Origin: Podarcis vaucheri
Taxonomy: Eukaryota
Reading direction: 5' to 3' (one strand)
DNA: 64,000 nt
Assembly (NCBI GenBank): GCA_965113315.1
Contig: OZ220366.1
A program made the position numbers and the translations under genes. This document shows positions 15,956 to 58,500 of the stretch, one piece after another (position 1 is the stretch's first letter; each line of letters starts with the position of its first letter). The notes beneath the pieces were generated by a model. That model saw only the letters and a list, made by a program, of their open reading frames with translations, was not told the DNA's origin and searched no databases.

Positions 15956-16177
15956 NNNNNNNNNNNNNNNNNNNNNNNNNNNNNNNNNNNNNNNNNNNNN
16001 NNNNNNNNNNNNNNNNNNNNNNNNNNNNNNNNNNNNNNNNNNNNNNNNNNNNNNNNNNNNNNNNNNNNNNNNNNNNNNNNNNNNNNNNNNNNNNNNNNNN
16101 NNNNNNNNNNNNNNNNNNNNNNNNNNNNNNNNNNNNNNNNNNNNNNNNNNNNNNNNNNNNNNNNNNNNNNNNNNNNN
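15956..16177. other. Assembly gap
   Basis: Run of N. Confidence 1.
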
Positions 16178-53963: not shown

Positions 53964-54093
53964 CTATGTTCCATCACTTTGTTTCTTGGAACTTCCTTCC
54001 AAAACTGACCCAGTTCTTGTGTTCCTGTTCCAGAACACTGCTCCATTTCTGCTGCCATAATCAAAAAACGATCTTGCAGGGAAGCTGCACAAC
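53964..54093 (-). CDS. MOSPD2: MOSPD2 coding exon, C-terminal half of the MSP domain
   Basis: 130-bp AG/GT exon encoding GCAASLQDRFLIMAAEMEQCSGTGTQELGQFWKEVPRNKVMEHR, in frame with both neighbours. Confidence 0.96.
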
Positions 54094-55112
54094 CTGTTTA
54101 ATCAACATGACAATTTTACTTCCTTTGGATTTAGGCAGAATTTCAAAAGTTTATACACTACAAGGAAAAAAAACCACACCCTTGACTATATCTACATATA
54201 CAAAAAGCTAGTTAGTTACTGAAGATATGCAGTAATTAGAAGCACTGAACAAAATTTGCCAATTCACAAAAGAGTTATGAAAGAGTAGAAGATAGATTCA
54301 GAGATTAAAATGTAAAACTATAAAGGCTGTACCTGCAAGAAAGCCACTACCTGTCATCCTTCTGAAATCATGAAAGTCCCTCAAATGGGGCTTCCTTGAC
54401 TACAAATTTCACCCCTTCATAATTATAGGTGCCCCTCTTAATCTCAATATACAAGGTACCCCTTGTAATTCGCAGACTTTATCTACTCAGCAAATTTTAT
54501 TTATTTTGGTCAAAAGTGGGCATGGGTGGGTAGGTGATAGATTTTTTAAAAAAAACAAAAAATCCCCATAATAGTAGCAGAGAAAGGCAGAAAGAATCAT
54601 CTCTCCAAAGTGGGATTCAGACTTTGAGTCTGAATTGGTGTAAATTGGGCTGTTTTCCAAAGCATGAATGTGGATTCAAATTGTATCTTGTAACCGGTGT
54701 TCAGATCTCATAAGAAGCCCTGGTGGACATAAGCTAATTGTAGGTTCATGAAAATCCCCAAACTGATTTACAGCAGATTCATGGGGCATATAAATAATTT
54801 GGGATTAATTTATTTTACCATATACCTATCACACAGCTGTCCTAAAACAAATTCTTCTAAAATCTAGTTGCTGTAGTTTTTCAAACACAGGTGGTATACA
54901 TTCTAATAGTCTCTCTCTCTCCCCCTCTCCACCCCCCTCTCCCACACACACTTTTGAAAGAATACACTACCTTTTACTTATTCATCCAACATTAAATATG
55001 CAGCCCAATTCCAGAATAAATAAAAAATAACAGTAATTAAATGTTAATAGGATCCAGCATATTTTGAATTTTTAGGGCAGGGCTCAATATAATGTTTACA
55101 CTATATACACAG

Positions 55113-55282
55113 NNNNNNNNNNNNNNNNNNNNNNNNNNNNNNNNNNNNNNNNNNNNNNNNNNNNNNNNNNNNNNNNNNNNNNNNNNNNNNNNNNNNNNNN
55201 NNNNNNNNNNNNNNNNNNNNNNNNNNNNNNNNNNNNNNNNNNNNNNNNNNNNNNNNNNNNNNNNNNNNNNNNNNNNNNNNNN
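55113..55282. other. Assembly gap abutting the fold-back array
   Basis: Run of N. Confidence 1.
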
Positions 55283-55345
55283 GGTACAGGAATGCAGGTT
55301 TTGGTGTCTTCGGGTGTCTTCCCGTGTAAGAGTCGGGGTGTCTGT

Positions 55346-55383
55346 GCGACGTTTCGACGAGGTCTCACTCGTCATCTTCAGGC
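55346..55383 (-). ncRNA. Minimal type I hammerhead ribozyme motif, copy 1
   Basis: GC-CUGAAGA-U-GACGAG(UGAGAC)CUCGUC-GAAA-CG-UC-GC: intact core, 6-bp stem II, palindromic ACGU in place of stem III, GUC cleavage triplet. Only 2 bp of stem I are evident. Confidence 0.75.
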
Positions 55384-55629
55384 TGGTGCTTTCGGCTTCT
55401 TGTTACTGGAACAGAGCAGAGTCTGGTGTTTGAGTTCCTATAAATACTGTTGAGGGGTGTGGTGTATAGCCTCCAACGTTCTGGGCAGAGAGGAAGTTCC
55501 TAGATTAGTGTGCCTTTTCTTCTTTTGTTCCTTAATTACTTGAGGGATATCTTGGGTGATTTCATGAGTGATATTCTGAATACCACTGGGTGGGTCATTA
55601 AGTGTAGATTAGTTGCTAAAGCTTTCGTG

Positions 55630-56046
55630 GAACATCACCACAAGAGAATAATCATGGAAGCCATCGAGATAGAGAAACACCCTCACAACATGAACAAGCG
55701 TGACGACACGTCCCGCCTGCCTGACATCTGGAAATTAGCCCTCCCCACAAAAACCGACACCAGAACCAGAGGCACACAGAACGCCGTCACCAATCAACCA
55801 CACCAGACCCAAACCCAGACCCTCTCCACAGACATATTACAGACTCCATCCAGTAGCCAAACTATAGTGGCACCTCCGGATGCTGCACCCCCCTGCAATC
55901 CCTACACAGATCTGGCTGGCACAAGGCACAAAACCACAGCTCGCCCCTATACACGAAGCCAAGCCAGAGCACAACTAAATGCAGCACAGCCATCTTCTCA
56001 GAAAAACTCTTCACAAGCTCAAGAGGTCAAGACACGAAAGCTTTAG
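55630..56046 (+). pseudogene. 5'-truncated Penelope-like ORF: C-terminus of the GIY-YIG endonuclease plus a low-complexity tail
   Basis: EHHHKRIIMEAIEIEKHPHNMNKRDDTSRLPDIWKLAL fits the R-x2-EAIEI...N-x-N-R-D...L-x3-W pattern that ends Penelope-like endonucleases. The frame is open to TAG at 56046. The listed ORF start at 55510 is an artefact of the inverted arm. Confidence 0.8.
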
Positions 56047-56278
56047 CAACTAATCTACACTTAATGACCCACCCAGTGGTATTCAGAATATCACTCATGA
56101 AATCACCCAAGATATCCCTCAAGTAATTAAGGAACAAAAGAAGAAAAGGCACACTAATCTAGGAACTTCCTCTCTGCCCAGAACGTTGGAGGCTATACAC
56201 CACACCCCTCAACAGTATTTATAGGAACTCAAACACCAGACTCTGCTCTGTTCCAGTAACAAGAAGCCGAAAGCACCA

Positions 56279-56316
56279 GCCTGAAGATGACGAGTGAGAC
56301 CTCGTCGAAACGTCGC
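56279..56316 (+). ncRNA. Minimal type I hammerhead ribozyme motif, copy 2
   Basis: gcCTGAAGAtGACGAGtgagacCTCGTCGAAAcgTCgc, identical to copy 1. Confidence 0.75.
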
Positions 56317-56365
56317 ACAGACACCCCGACTCTTACACGGGAAGACACCCGAAGACACCAAAACC

Positions 56366-56368
<3 letters not shown>

Positions 56369-56400
<32 letters not shown>
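56369..56400. repeat. (TA)n microsatellite between fold-back units 1 and 2
   Basis: Read directly. Further (TA)n tracts lie at about 57219-57266 and 57524-57553. Confidence 0.97.
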
Positions 56401-56403
<3 letters not shown>

Positions 56404-56484
56404 CTTTCGTAGATTTTCACGGGTACAGGAATGCAGGTTTTGGTGTCTTCGGGTGTCTTCCCGTGTAAGAGTCGGGGTGTCTGG

Positions 56485-56522
56485 GCGACGTTTCGACGAG
56501 GTCTCACTCGTCATCTTCAGGC
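56485..56522 (-). ncRNA. Minimal type I hammerhead ribozyme motif, copy 3
   Basis: Exact reverse complement of copy 2. Confidence 0.75.
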
Positions 56523-57128
56523 TGGTGCTTTCGGCTTCTTGTTACTGGAACAGAGCAGAATCTGGTGTTTGAGTTCCTATAAATACTGTTGAGGGGTGTG
56601 GTGTATAGCCTCCAACGTTCTGGGCAGAGAGGAAGTTCCTAGATTAGTGTGCCTTTTCTTCTTTTGTTCCTTAATTACTTGAGGGATATCTTGAGTGATT
56701 TCATGAGTGATATTCTGAATACCACTGGGTGGGTCATTAAGTGTAGATTAGTTGCTAAAGCTTTCGTGTCTTGACCTCTTGAGCTTGTGAAGAGTTTTTC
56801 TGAGAAGATGGCTGTGCTGCATTTAGTTGTGCTCTGGCTTGGCTTCGTGTATAGGGGCGAGCTGTGGTTTTGTGCCTTGTGCCAGCCAGATCTGTGTAGG
56901 GATTGCAGGGGGGTGCAGCATCCGGAGGTGCCACTATAGTTTGGCTACTGGATCACTCAAGATATCCCTCAAGTAATTAAGGAACAAAAGAAGAAAAGGC
57001 ACACTAATCTAGGAACTTCCTCTCTGCCCAGAACGTTGGAGGCTATACACCACACCCCTCAACAGTATTTATAGGAACTCAAACACCAGATTCTGCTCTG
57101 TTCCAGTAACAAGAAGCCGAAAGCACCA

Positions 57129-57166
57129 GCCTGAAGATGACGAGTGAGACCTCGTCGAAACGTCGC
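57129..57166 (+). ncRNA. Minimal type I hammerhead ribozyme motif, copy 4
   Basis: Same 38-nt motif. Confidence 0.75.
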
Positions 57167-57215
57167 CCAGACACCCCGACTCTTACACGGGAAGACACCC
57201 GAAGACACCAAAACC

Positions 57216-57268
<53 letters not shown>

Positions 57269-57348
57269 TTTCGTAGATTTTCACGGGTACAGGAATGCAG
57301 GTTTTGGTGTCTTCGGGTGTCTTCCCGTGTAAGAGTCGGGGTGTCTGG

Positions 57349-57386
57349 GCGACGTTTCGACGAGGTCTCACTCGTCATCTTCAGGC
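57349..57386 (-). ncRNA. Minimal type I hammerhead ribozyme motif, copy 5
   Basis: Same 38-nt motif, reverse complement. Confidence 0.75.
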
Positions 57387-57433
57387 TGGAGCTTTCGGCT
57401 TCTTGTTACTGGAACAAGAAGCCGAAAGCTCCA

Positions 57434-57471
57434 GCCTGAAGATGACGAGTGAGACCTCGTCGAAACGTCGC
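57434..57471 (+). ncRNA. Minimal type I hammerhead ribozyme motif, copy 6
   Basis: Same 38-nt motif. Confidence 0.75.
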
Positions 57472-57520
57472 CCAGACACCCCGACTCTTACACGGGAAGA
57501 CACCCGAAGACACCAAAACC

Positions 57521-57556
<36 letters not shown>

Positions 57557-58127
57557 CAATGACAATCCAAGTGCTCTCCTAATCATTCTAGAAAATAACT
57601 CAAATATCTTTACACTACATCAGTGAGGCTGCTACTTATTTGAAACATGTCCCTAAATGTCAAAGTTTTGATAAGCAAAAATGGTCATTTAAATAGTACA
57701 CAACTTGAACCCGAGGCCTCTTTAACAGTATATTTATTTGTTAATCAGTAGCTAACTTTTTGCATATTTACCGGAAGCATAATAAACAATAGAATTTTTA
57801 GAAACAGGCTACTAATGATAGAGATTTGCAAAGAGATTGAGGAATGAACTTTATTAGGGTTTGTTCTGTTCAAATTTTGGCCTATGGAATTCTACCTATA
57901 AGGGACTGCAAACAGGCCTCTTCTCTCCACTACTGGGGATGAGTGAAAGGTTGCACTGGGAGATGTGGACTAGACAGAAGCAGTCATATGAAATCTGAAC
58001 AGTTATTTGGTTTCACGAATGCTTATGTTCTAGTACATGTACATAGAATTCCAAGCTTGCTGCCAGTAATGTACATTACAGAACTTGTTTATTTCATTCA
58101 TACAATAGTGTAAAAGATTTTACTTAC

Positions 58128-58224
58128 CTCCATGAAGAGATACTATTATATCTAGTGATGTGCCTGGTTCACAGCTGCTGTTACTTGGCTTCACTCTGTA
58201 CTTGTCAGGAGCAGTTGTTCTAAC
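58128..58224 (-). CDS. MOSPD2: MOSPD2 coding exon, MSP domain signature
   Basis: 97-bp AG/GT exon encoding VRTTAPDKYRVKPSNSSCEPGTSLDIIVSLHG. It completes the VAP/MSP signature FKVRTTAPxKYRVKP. Confidence 0.96.
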
Positions 58225-58500
58225 CTAAACAAAGTGTAACTGTATTAAATGCTACCAGTTTTCTTATTTAACAAAGTAGAGGACTAGATTCTACTCACAA
58301 CTTACCAGTAGGACAAAAACTTGATTAGTATTCTCCATTTGTGTTATTTTGCTTCTGAACACTAATCTTCTATTTAACTTCTGCAAAATACCAAACTTTA
58401 CTCTCCGAAGTGTGTGTGTGTGTGGGGGGGGGTATCAACAGGCTTGGGGGAAGCCCAAAGTTTGCAACAAGGACTTGGCATGCACAGTGGCCACGTAATG

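What the first reader, a model, noticed from the sequence alone, without database searches (positions are those of the whole stretch)
55283..57553. Tandem array of three fold-back Penelope-like ends carrying six hammerhead ribozyme motifs, inside a MOSPD2 intron
Seen: the layout is [<- ->](TA)n[<- ->](TA)n[<- ->](TA)n, with stems of 338, 269 and 113 bp in which I found no mismatches. Every arm holds the same 38-nt motif GC-CUGAAGA-U-GACGAG-UGAGAC-CUCGUC-GAAA-CG-UC-GC. Known: CUGANGA...GAAA...UH is the hammerhead core. Penelope-like elements carry minimal type I hammerheads in their terminal repeats, with stem III replaced by a short palindrome (here ACGU), and these are reported to cleave as dimers. 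Inference: this is a young cluster with three ribozyme copies per strand, so a read-through transcript in either direction would carry potential dimer partners in cis.
Basis: partly seen in the sequence, partly recalled or inferred. Interest (0 to 1): 0.82.

Follow-up and report, generated by a model that had tools for sequence, protein, structure and literature searches.

The report
Three fold-back Penelope retroelement insertions
Three young, head-to-head pairs of truncated copies of a lizard Penelope-like (Poseidon-type) retrotransposon sit in a (TA)n microsatellite inside a MOSPD2 intron; each arm carries the family's usual minimal hammerhead motif, so this is a tidy but ordinary example of a known kind of insertion.

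Summary
There are three inverted-repeat units with perfect stems of 338, 269 and 113 nt, separated by (TA)16, (TA)24 and (TA)15. The hammerhead-like motif occurs six times without a mismatch, three per strand.

Each arm is a 5'-truncated copy of one Penelope-like element. A copy holds the end of the GIY-YIG endonuclease ORF, a ~240-nt pseudo-LTR, and a hammerhead motif overlapping the next ORF's ATG. The right arms stop at about +83 of that ORF. The left arms stop at about +113, so they carry a 30-nt "tail".

These features match the published biochemistry of the anole element Poseidon_Ac:
- two internal reverse-transcription start sites;
- a tail at one end only;
- cleavage and extension of both DNA strands;
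- AT-rich targets.

The MOSPD2 intron claim is confirmed by spliced RNA contigs.

Read-through RNA is predicted to bury every motif in a perfect hairpin. Rfam hammerhead models give no hit. The studied anole hammerhead needs protein to cleave and is dispensable for insertion.

Short-read contigs cannot span the array, and it abuts an N gap, so the unit number is unverified.

The scan already holds 65 Penelope/hammerhead notes on other DNA of this genome. This is a known kind, of low interest.

The parts
54094..58127 (-). MOSPD2 intron (4,034 nt, GT..AG on the - strand) that holds the N run and the whole array
   Evidence: A spliced contig of run X15 joins 54091|58126 and 58226|59236 (loose ends). 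Splice dinucleotides were read.
58128..58224 (-). MOSPD2 exon (MSP domain), upstream of the intron
   Evidence: Pfam PF00635, E 2e-5. PDB MOSPD2 6tqu residues 54-86, E 7e-14, against VAPA at 0.04.
53964..54093 (-). MOSPD2 exon (MSP domain, next part), downstream of the intron
   Evidence: PDB MOSPD2 6tqu residues 89-128, E 3e-17.
55113..55282 (.). N run that cuts the tail of unit 1; the left limit of the array is unknown
55283..55629 (-). Unit 1, left copy: 338 nt of the element's 3' region plus the 9-10 nt of tail that the N run leaves
55630..56370 (+). Unit 1, right copy (741 nt, the longest). It holds the ORF C-terminus 55630-56046 (stop at 56044-56046), the pLTR ~56047-56280, the hammerhead motif with ATG at 56287, and ends at about +83 on (TA)n
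   Evidence: Other genomic copies continue upstream of 55628 (loose ends).
56369..56400 (.). (TA)16, a remnant of the target microsatellite
56402..56431 (-). 30-nt 'tail' of the unit 2 left copy (ORF nt ~+84 to +113, in frame)
   Evidence: It matches the tail at nt ~85-119 of Poseidon_Ac.
56432..56953 (-). Unit 2, left copy (523 nt; reaches into the ORF C-terminus)
   Evidence: (I1)
56952..57220 (+). Unit 2, right copy (269 nt, no tail)
57219..57266 (.). (TA)24
57266..57295 (-). 30-nt tail of the unit 3 left copy
57296..57416 (-). Unit 3, left copy (122 nt)
57413..57525 (+). Unit 3, right copy (113 nt, no tail)
57524..57553 (.). (TA)15, followed by unique intron sequence
   Evidence: The flank 57563-58300 lies in single-copy contigs of three runs.
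56279..56316 (+). Minimal hammerhead-like motif; predicted cut after C56314. Identical copies lie at 57129-57166 (+), 57434-57471 (+), 55346-55383 (-), 56485-56522 (-) and 57349-57386 (-)

Best explanation
The array is a cluster of three insertions of one young, very abundant Poseidon-type Penelope-like retroelement (PLE) into a (TA)n microsatellite in a MOSPD2 intron. Each insertion is a head-to-head pair of 5'-truncated copies. The 3' ends of the two copies face outward onto (TA)n. Their truncated 5' ends are joined in the middle through 2-4 nt of microhomology. Inferred mechanism: the element's ribonucleoprotein cut both strands of the AT-rich target, and each 3'-OH primed reverse transcription of the element RNA inward. 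One cDNA started at the distal internal start site (about +113 of the ORF, which gives the 30-nt tail). The other started at the proximal site (about +83, no tail). Both cDNAs stopped early and were joined. Both arms were copied from RNA of one source copy, so each unit has private variants that its two arms share. The hammerhead motif is a passenger: it overlaps the ORF start codon, which lies just upstream of the reverse-transcription start sites, so every 3' fragment longer than about 90 nt carries it. At this locus it probably does nothing. Shown here: the anatomy, the family identity, the termini, the microhomology and the shared private variants. Inferred: dual-strand priming, and three separate events.
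For: Anatomy. PLE identity: the ORF fragment is 68% identical to Phrynocephalus 'GIY-YIG domain-containing' proteins and starts inside the last ~17 residues of their Pfam GIY-YIG domain. By eye it also aligns with the Poseidon_Ac C-terminus...REAIEIHKH..N.N.K....IW. Termini: right arms end at +82 to +84 and left arms at about +113 of the ORF that starts at the ATG inside the hammerhead motif. In Poseidon_Ac the hammerhead likewise overlaps the ATG, the cut lies 26 nt after it, reverse transcription starts at two internal sites, and the ~34-nt tail spans nt ~85-119. The Poseidon_Ac protein cuts and extends both DNA strands and prefers AT-rich DNA. Inverted 5'-truncated copies, a 30-40-bp tail at one end only, and (TA)n targets are described PLE hallmarks (PMC8557442). 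All 4 variant sites between units are shared by both arms of a unit, and the arms show 0 differences over 720 compared nt. The centre junctions have 2, 2 and 4 nt of microhomology (loose end at 55628). My calculation gives P about 0.004 for three blunt joins to show at least 2 nt each. Many other genomic copies end at the same tail-less terminus directly on (TA)n (loose ends at 57295 in three runs). PLEs are reported to insert into or next to earlier PLE copies (PMC6765202).
Against: No read or contig spans the array, and it abuts an N run, so the unit number and left boundary are unverified. All three units have the tail on the same side. That has a 1-in-4 chance for independent events but is automatic under tandem duplication. 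In vitro, Poseidon_Ac showed no strand difference in start-site use, so 'one tail per unit' needs a coupling that has not been demonstrated. Dual-strand priming in vivo is an inference from in vitro work on a different family: about 45% amino-acid identity in the short region I could compare by eye.
Confidence: 0.72

Rival explanations
1. A single ancestral fold-back insertion was amplified to three units by unequal exchange or slippage between the flanking (TA)n tracts. Each palindrome then lost a different part of its centre by microhomology-mediated deletion, and arm-to-arm gene conversion kept the arms identical.
For: All units have the same polarity, with the tail on the left. The (TA)n tracts offer substrates for unequal exchange. 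Palindrome-centre deletions would also leave microhomology. The conserved tail-plus-arm boundary in units 2 and 3 differs at only one base (56401 T against 57265 A).
Against: It needs at least two duplications, two or three independent centre deletions, and conversion at all 4 variant sites with none left unconverted. The longer arm is on the right in unit 1 and on the left in unit 2. Repeated PLE insertion next to earlier copies and into (TA)n is the documented behaviour.
Confidence: 0.15
2. Each fold-back arose by snap-back. A single cDNA folded onto itself at a 2-4-nt microhomology and copied itself back, so the second arm is a copy of the first rather than a second priming event.
For: The arms are identical and include the private variants. 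There is microhomology at the turn. The loops of 403, 252 and about 0-5 nt fit a fold-back point internal to the cDNA.
Against: A self-copy should reproduce the first arm's terminus. Here one arm always has the 30-nt tail and the other always stops exactly at the proximal start site, a terminus that many independent copies in the genome share. Two priming events at the two known start sites explain this directly.
Confidence: 0.1
3. The array, or its unit number, is an assembly artefact: a mis-join or over-expansion of a high-copy repeat next to a gap.
For: It begins at an N run. The family is extremely abundant: summed contig depth is about 10^6 against 141 for the single-copy flank in X1. No contig spans any unit. 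PLE structures are known to trouble assemblies.
Against: The units differ from one another in a structured way, with private variants on both arms, different truncation points, and junctions with microhomology. A collapse or duplication error would not create that. The bin holding the unit 3 centre and its private variant has depth of about 1.7-2.1 times single copy in X1 and X3 (6 times in X4) after multi-mapping contigs are placed elsewhere (table 2). This is indirect. The structure obeys PLE insertion rules in detail.
Confidence: 0.07
4. The six motifs are working ribozymes here. Read-through or MOSPD2 pre-mRNA transcripts carry three sense copies that pair as dimers and self-cleave.
For: All core positions are present, with the ACGU palindrome for an intermolecular helix III. 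PLE min-HHRs cleave weakly as dimers or trimers in vitro. The Poseidon_Ac motif of the same design cleaves with protein, and its C3/G8 mutants behave as expected.
Against: The predicted hairpins of -246 to -760 kcal/mol bury every motif. The double-hammerhead fold is less stable than two free monomers. Helix I has only 2 contiguous base pairs (sequence). Rfam gives no hit. For Poseidon_Ac there is no cleavage without protein, no RNA ends at the cut site in vivo, and cleavage is dispensable for insertion. A spliced MOSPD2 contig crossing this intron was seen in run X15, but whether that animal carries the array is unknown.
Confidence: 0.06

Closest known systems
Poseidon_Ac (PAc), the Penelope/Poseidon-clade PLE of Anolis carolinensis (Frangieh et al. 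2024, PMC11167929)
   Same: A hammerhead of the design CUGANGA-U-(6-bp stem II)-GAAACGUC overlaps the ORF start codon, with the cut about 25-26 nt after the ATG. Copies end at two internal positions of the ORF, about +84 and +113-119, and the 30-34 nt between them is the 'tail'. Targets are AT-rich. The GIY-YIG C-terminus shares the REAIEI..KH..N.N motif.
   Different: It is a different family. Stem II differs at 5 of 6 pairs while pairing is kept (GACGAG/CUCGUC here, GCCUGC/GUGGGC in PAc). The loop is 6 nt against 7. Helix I has 2 bp against 3. The pLTR is about 240 nt against 126. The 3' core GAAACGUC is read in another frame (K-R-R against E-T-S). The target here is a pure (TA)n rather than ATT. 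This comparison was made by eye, because the PAc letters have no reference usable in the tools.
Minimal hammerheads (min-HHR) of metazoan PLEs (Cervera & de la Pena 2014, PMC4209133; dimer cleavage also in Lunse et al. 2017, cited through PMC6765202)
   Same: Type I topology, no stem III hairpin, palindromic 15.2-16.2, an extra nucleotide between A9 and G10.1, a long helix II, a short helix I, and pairs on opposite strands 100-700 bp apart.
   Different: Helix I has only 2 contiguous pairs, as in the D. virilis variant. Activity is untested.
Canonical PLE insertion architecture (Craig et al. 2021, PMC8557442)
   Same: An inverted 5'-truncated copy lies next to another copy, a 30-40-bp tail sits at one end only, and the insertion bias is towards (TA)n microsatellites.
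   Different: No full-length or tandem (pLTR-ORF-pLTR) copy is present. There are three such fold-backs in a row with the same polarity.
Animal non-LTR retrozymes (tandem hammerhead repeats giving circRNAs; PMC7229834, bioRxiv 10.64898/2026.07.22.740005)
   Same: They derive from PLE pLTR sequences. Several same-strand hammerheads lie within about 1 kb.
   Different: Retrozymes are direct head-to-tail repeats of one unit. Here same-strand motifs, 850 and 305 nt apart, are separated by inverted copies and microsatellite, and there is no unit-length repeat.
L1 twin priming (inversion/5'-truncation of LINE-1 insertions; from my own knowledge)
   Same: Two priming events on opposite strands of one target give inverted segments joined with microhomology.
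   Different: In L1 the two segments are adjacent, non-overlapping parts of one RNA. Here the two arms are overlapping copies of the same 3' region, which gives a true palindrome.

Membership tests
Penelope-like element (Penelope/Poseidon clade), truncated insertion | ORF ending in a GIY-YIG endonuclease | tested here: met
   The 138-aa fragment (55630-56043) is 68% identical to P0001 (Phrynocephalus forsythii, 'GIY-YIG domain-containing') from its residue 118. Pfam GIY-YIG covers P0001 residues 66-134. Only the last ~17 domain residues survive here. Pfam on the fragment alone finds nothing.
Penelope-like element (Penelope/Poseidon clade), truncated insertion | Telomerase-like reverse transcriptase in full-length members | not testable with these tools
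   All six copies are 5'-truncated (741 nt at most). Contigs of other copies continue upstream of 55628, but no full-length copy is in the window, and no eukaryote genome collection is on hand.
Penelope-like element (Penelope/Poseidon clade), truncated insertion | pLTR with a hammerhead motif near the ORF start | tested here: met
   ORF stop at 56044-56046, then about 240 nt, then the motif at 56279-56316 with ATG at 56287. Poseidon_Ac has the same layout.
Penelope-like element (Penelope/Poseidon clade), truncated insertion | Adjacent inverted 5'-truncated copy, and a 30-40-bp tail at one end only | tested here: met
   This holds for three units out of three. The rule is described in PMC8557442.
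Penelope-like element (Penelope/Poseidon clade), truncated insertion | AT-rich or (TA)n target | tested here: met
   Every outward terminus abuts (TA)15-24. Other genomic copies do the same (loose ends at 57295).
Hammerhead ribozyme, minimal type I (PLE min-HHR) | Core C3 U4 G5 A6 N7 G8 A9 ... G12 A13 A14 ... A15.1-U16.1, H17 | tested here: met
   CUGAAGA ... GAAA-CG-UC in all six copies.
Hammerhead ribozyme, minimal type I (PLE min-HHR) | Helix II closed by G10.1-C11.1, with one extra nucleotide after A9 | tested here: met
   U, then GACGAG/CUCGUC (6 bp) with the loop UGAGAC. This is the only helix in the monomer MFE that belongs to the hammerhead fold. The features are listed.
Hammerhead ribozyme, minimal type I (PLE min-HHR) | Palindromic 15.2-16.2 that allows an intermolecular helix III | tested here: met
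   ACGU. The designed dimer is nested and evaluates to -19.1 kcal/mol, which is less stable than the alternatives.
Hammerhead ribozyme, minimal type I (PLE min-HHR) | Helix I | tested here: inconclusive
   Only GC/GC (2 bp) is contiguous with the core. Position 1.3 is A in unit 1 and C in units 2 and 3, and neither pairs with A2.3. A 2-bp helix I is reported for D. virilis.
Hammerhead ribozyme, minimal type I (PLE min-HHR) | Match to curated hammerhead covariance models (Rfam) | tested here: not met
   No hammerhead hit at gathering score, at E<=10 on 2.3 kb, or at E<=10 on the 74-nt motif alone. This is expected, since min-HHRs lack the stem III hairpin and were found with RNAmotif descriptors.
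Hammerhead ribozyme, minimal type I (PLE min-HHR) | Covariation that supports the helices | tested here: inconclusive
   The six copies are identical. Against the Poseidon_Ac motif printed, stem II changes at 5 of 6 pairs and stays paired. This is by eye and rests on one comparison.
Hammerhead ribozyme, minimal type I (PLE min-HHR) | Site-specific self-cleavage | not testable with these tools
   It needs an in vitro assay. The contigs laid cannot show RNA ends.
Animal non-LTR retrozyme | Direct head-to-tail repeats of one hammerhead-bearing unit | tested here: not met
   Same-strand motifs are 850 and 305 nt apart, with inverted copies between them. There is no unit-length direct repeat.

The most novel reading that the evidence does not exclude
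The three units may be a natural record that PLE integration is a coupled two-strand event in which the two strands are not equivalent. One strand's cDNA always starts at the distal site (tail) and the other's at the proximal site (no tail), both from RNA of one source copy. If the two ends chose start sites independently, 'exactly one tail per unit, always on the same side' would occur with probability of at most 1/64. A genome-wide census of such young fold-backs could then give the in vivo order and geometry of PLE integration, which in vitro work has left open.
Probability: 0.3. Interest if true: 0.45.

Novelty: new member of a known kind. Interest (0 to 1): 0.22.

Why it matters
The locus mainly serves as a clean, young example. 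It preserves both reverse-transcription start sites, the one-sided tail, the microhomology joins and the (TA)n target of a Poseidon-type PLE. It therefore gives in vivo support to the in vitro model for the anole element. It also shows that the hammerhead core is conserved at the nucleotide level between two lizard PLE families, even though the ORF reads it in different frames. For the host, 2.3 kb of perfect palindromes fill more than half of a 4-kb MOSPD2 intron. That could yield long double-stranded RNA (editing, small RNAs) or genomic instability. None of this is new in kind.

Tried and rejected
- Rfam at gathering score on the whole window, at E<=10 on the array, and at E<=10 on the motif alone gave no hammerhead. 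The only hits were spurious miRNA-hairpin matches caused by the palindromes.
- Pfam on the ORF fragment and on the 27-aa ORF start found nothing.
- Short-read contigs of four runs are too fragmented (60-130 nt within the repeat) to span any unit or the array. They show no RNA ends either.
- The post-cleavage leader with tail (56401-56486, - strand) was folded to look for the AC-rich stem-loop reported for Poseidon_Ac. A weak hairpin appears, but it is not better than shuffles (z = -1.19).
- The 'tail-to-tail' pairing (I1, 523 nt, 99%) was considered as the true unit and rejected, because those arms differ at 3 sites while arms within a fold-back differ at none.
- A retrozyme reading was rejected because there are no direct unit repeats.
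- A look-up of our findings by sequence came back blank.
- Lunse et al. 2017 is not held and is cited only through a review.
- A tool alignment of the Poseidon_Ac consensus with this element was left out, because those letters exist only in a paper's text and have no reference. The comparison is by eye.
- No attempt was made to fill the N run.
Full report
**Observation**

- The repeat finder finds three inverted repeats with perfect complementarity: 55292-55629/56033-56370 (338 nt), 56431-56699/56952-57220 (269 nt) and 57295-57407/57413-57525 (113 nt).
- Tandem Repeats Finder gives (AT)16, (AT)24 and (AT)15 after units 1, 2 and 3.
- The hammerhead-like motif occurs six times without a mismatch, three per strand, and none is expected by chance.
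- Looser descriptors (CTGANGA, 10-34 nt, then GAAACGTC or CGAAAC) hit only these six places in the 64-kb window.

- A conserved 30-nt stretch lies between each (TA)n and the following left arm.
- An N run (55113-55282) touches unit 1.
- The arms are of unequal length, so the 'stems' are only the parts the arms share.

**Anatomy**

I oriented all six arms as copies of one element and aligned them from their outward ends. Their lengths are 338 and 741 nt (unit 1), 523 and 269 nt (unit 2), and 122 and 113 nt (unit 3).

The longest copy (55630-56370, + strand) reads, in order:
- the end of an ORF, with its stop at 56044-56046;
- about 240 nt of non-coding sequence;
- the hammerhead motif (56279-56316), with an ATG at 56287 inside it;
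- 82-84 nt of a new ORF, after which (TA)n begins.

The three left (- strand) copies run 30 nt further, in frame (MTSETSSKRRPDTPTLTREDTRRHQNLH-SCTRENLRK), before they meet (TA)n. In unit 1 the N run cuts this extension.

At the three centres the two copies overlap by 2, 2 and 4 nt. For unit 1 the natural upstream sequence comes from the contigs that run on at 55628. Three blunt joins would each show at least 2 nt of apparent microhomology with P of about 0.004 (my calculation).

**Identity**

- The ORF fragment finds lizard proteins named 'GIY-YIG domain-containing' (Phrynocephalus forsythii; 68% identity, E 4e-25).
- It aligns from residue 118 of P0001, whose Pfam GIY-YIG domain covers residues 66-134. 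The fragment is therefore the last few residues of a GIY-YIG endonuclease plus its C-terminal extension.
- By eye it also matches the C-terminus of Poseidon_Ac printed (HREAIEIHKHVDNFNRKEETMKMNKIW against IMEAIEIEKHPHNMNKRDDTSRLPDIW).
- A GIY-YIG ORF followed by a short repeat with a hammerhead is the signature of Penelope-like elements.
- The family is very abundant. Summed contig depth over the arms is three to four orders of magnitude above the single-copy flank in three DNA runs (the tool warns this is not a copy number).
- The scan already holds 65 notes on Penelope/hammerhead in this genome.

**Match to the studied anole element**

Frangieh et al. 2024 (PMC11167929) report the following for Poseidon_Ac.
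- The cut lies 26 nt after the ATG.
- Reverse transcription starts at two internal sites of the RNA.
- The roughly 34-nt 'tail', seen at one end of genomic copies, is the sequence between those sites (nt ~85-119).
- The protein cuts and extends both DNA strands.
- It prefers AT-rich DNA.

Here the ATG is A9-U-G10.1 of the motif and the cut is 25 nt after it. The right arms end at +82 to +84 and the left arms at about +113. Craig et al. [quoted passage not shown] All of these hold for three units out of three. Many other copies in the genome also end at the tail-less terminus directly on (TA)n (loose ends at 57295 in runs X1, X3 and X4).

**How the units formed**

Four sites vary between units (window 56317/55345, 56275/55387, 56241/55421 and 56107/55555, with their counterparts in the other units). 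At all four sites the two arms of a unit agree, and no arm differs from its partner over 720 compared nt. The arms of a unit therefore share a more recent origin than the units share with each other.

The simplest reading is three insertions. In each, both strands of the microsatellite were nicked and both 3'-OH ends primed cDNA synthesis on RNA of one source copy, one at the distal start site and one at the proximal. The two incomplete cDNAs were then joined by microhomology. This part is inference.

The rivals are as follows.
- A single ancestral unit was amplified by exchange between (TA)n tracts, with later centre deletions and arm-to-arm conversion. This explains the common polarity but needs many steps.
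- Each unit arose by snap-back self-copying. This does not explain why one arm has the tail and the other stops exactly at the proximal start site.
- The array is an assembly error. The structured differences between units argue against this.

**The hammerhead motif**

- All core positions are present.
- Helix II is 6 bp, closed by G10.1-C11.1.
- There is the extra nucleotide after A9.
- Positions 15.1-16.1 form the palindrome ACGU.

These are the features listed for PLE min-HHRs.

Compared by eye with the Poseidon_Ac motif, stem II differs at five of six pairs yet stays paired. The 3' core GAAACGUC is read in another frame (K-R-R here, E-T-S there). Both points speak for conservation at the RNA level.

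Evidence against a strong claim:
- helix I has only two contiguous pairs;
- Rfam's hammerhead models give no hit at any threshold;
- published PLE min-HHRs cleave poorly even as dimers;
- the Poseidon_Ac motif cleaves only with protein, is not needed for insertion in vitro, and leaves no RNA ends at the cut site in vivo.

The copies lie head to head, so an RNA made in either direction meets the antisense copy of a unit before the sense copy.
- ViennaRNA folds unit 3 in both directions as one complete hairpin (-245.8 kcal/mol).
- Units 1 and 2 fold at -760.5 and -632.1 kcal/mol, with the sense motif fully paired to its complement.
- The designed double hammerhead scores -19.1 kcal/mol. Two free monomers score -23.2, and the unconstrained dimer scores -29.4.

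Thermodynamic folding ignores kinetics, tertiary contacts and proteins, so this lowers the idea but does not exclude it.

**Context**

- A contig of run X15 joins 54091|58126 and 58226|59236, so X15 is RNA and the joins are splices.
- The exon 58128-58224 (- strand) matches the MSP domain (Pfam) and MOSPD2 chain 6tqu residues 54-86, far better than it matches VAPA.
- The exon 53964-54093 matches residues 89-128 of the same chain.
- The intron 54094-58127 has GT..AG on the - strand. It is 4,034 nt long, and the array fills 2,271 nt of it.
- I searched the exons one by one and did not join them.
- Whether the animal of run X15 carries the array is unknown.

**Limits**

- No read or contig spans the array.
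- After multi-mapping contigs are placed elsewhere, the bin with the unit 3 centre and its private variant keeps a depth of about twice single copy in X1 and X3. A real palindrome would give this, but the evidence is indirect.
- The N run was left as it is.
- The Poseidon_Ac letters have no reference, so they were not put into any tool.

**Verdict**

This is a real, young and well-preserved cluster of Penelope-like fold-back insertions with the family's minimal hammerhead motif. It is a new instance of a known kind. The most interesting reading not excluded is that such units record a coupled, strand-asymmetric use of the two reverse-transcription start sites.

Noticed in passing
window 58128-58224, 53964-54093, 59234 onward (- strand): Three consecutive MOSPD2 exons of the MSP domain, joined in a spliced contig of run X15. 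This shows that the run, listed only as 'RNA?', is RNA.
   Followed up: yes
window 56307-56316 compared with Poseidon_Ac nt 22-29: The 3' half of the hammerhead core (GAAACGUC) lies inside the ORF in both lizard families but is read in different frames (K-R-R here, E-T-S in Poseidon_Ac). The frames are back in register by the tail (RENLRK against HESLRQ). This suggests selection on the RNA, not the peptide. It was seen by eye only.
   Followed up: partly
window 56401 against 57265: The tail/(TA)n boundary differs by one base between units 2 and 3 (...GAAAGCAA|AT.. against ...GAAAGCAT|AT..). This is either a 1-nt difference in the reverse-transcription start or a point change.
   Followed up: no
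window 57563-58300: The unique flank is identical in contigs of X1 and X3, which carry different organism labels. It shows 6 substitutions and 3 indels in X4, which carries the same label as X1 but comes from another study. The labels therefore do not track divergence simply.
   Followed up: no
window 15956-16177: A second N run in the window.
   Followed up: no
window 55283-57600: The palindromes draw strong but spurious Rfam miRNA-precursor matches (MIR7723, 110 bits, E 2e-23, below its gathering score of 200). This is a warning for automated miRNA annotation at PLE fold-backs.
   Followed up: yes
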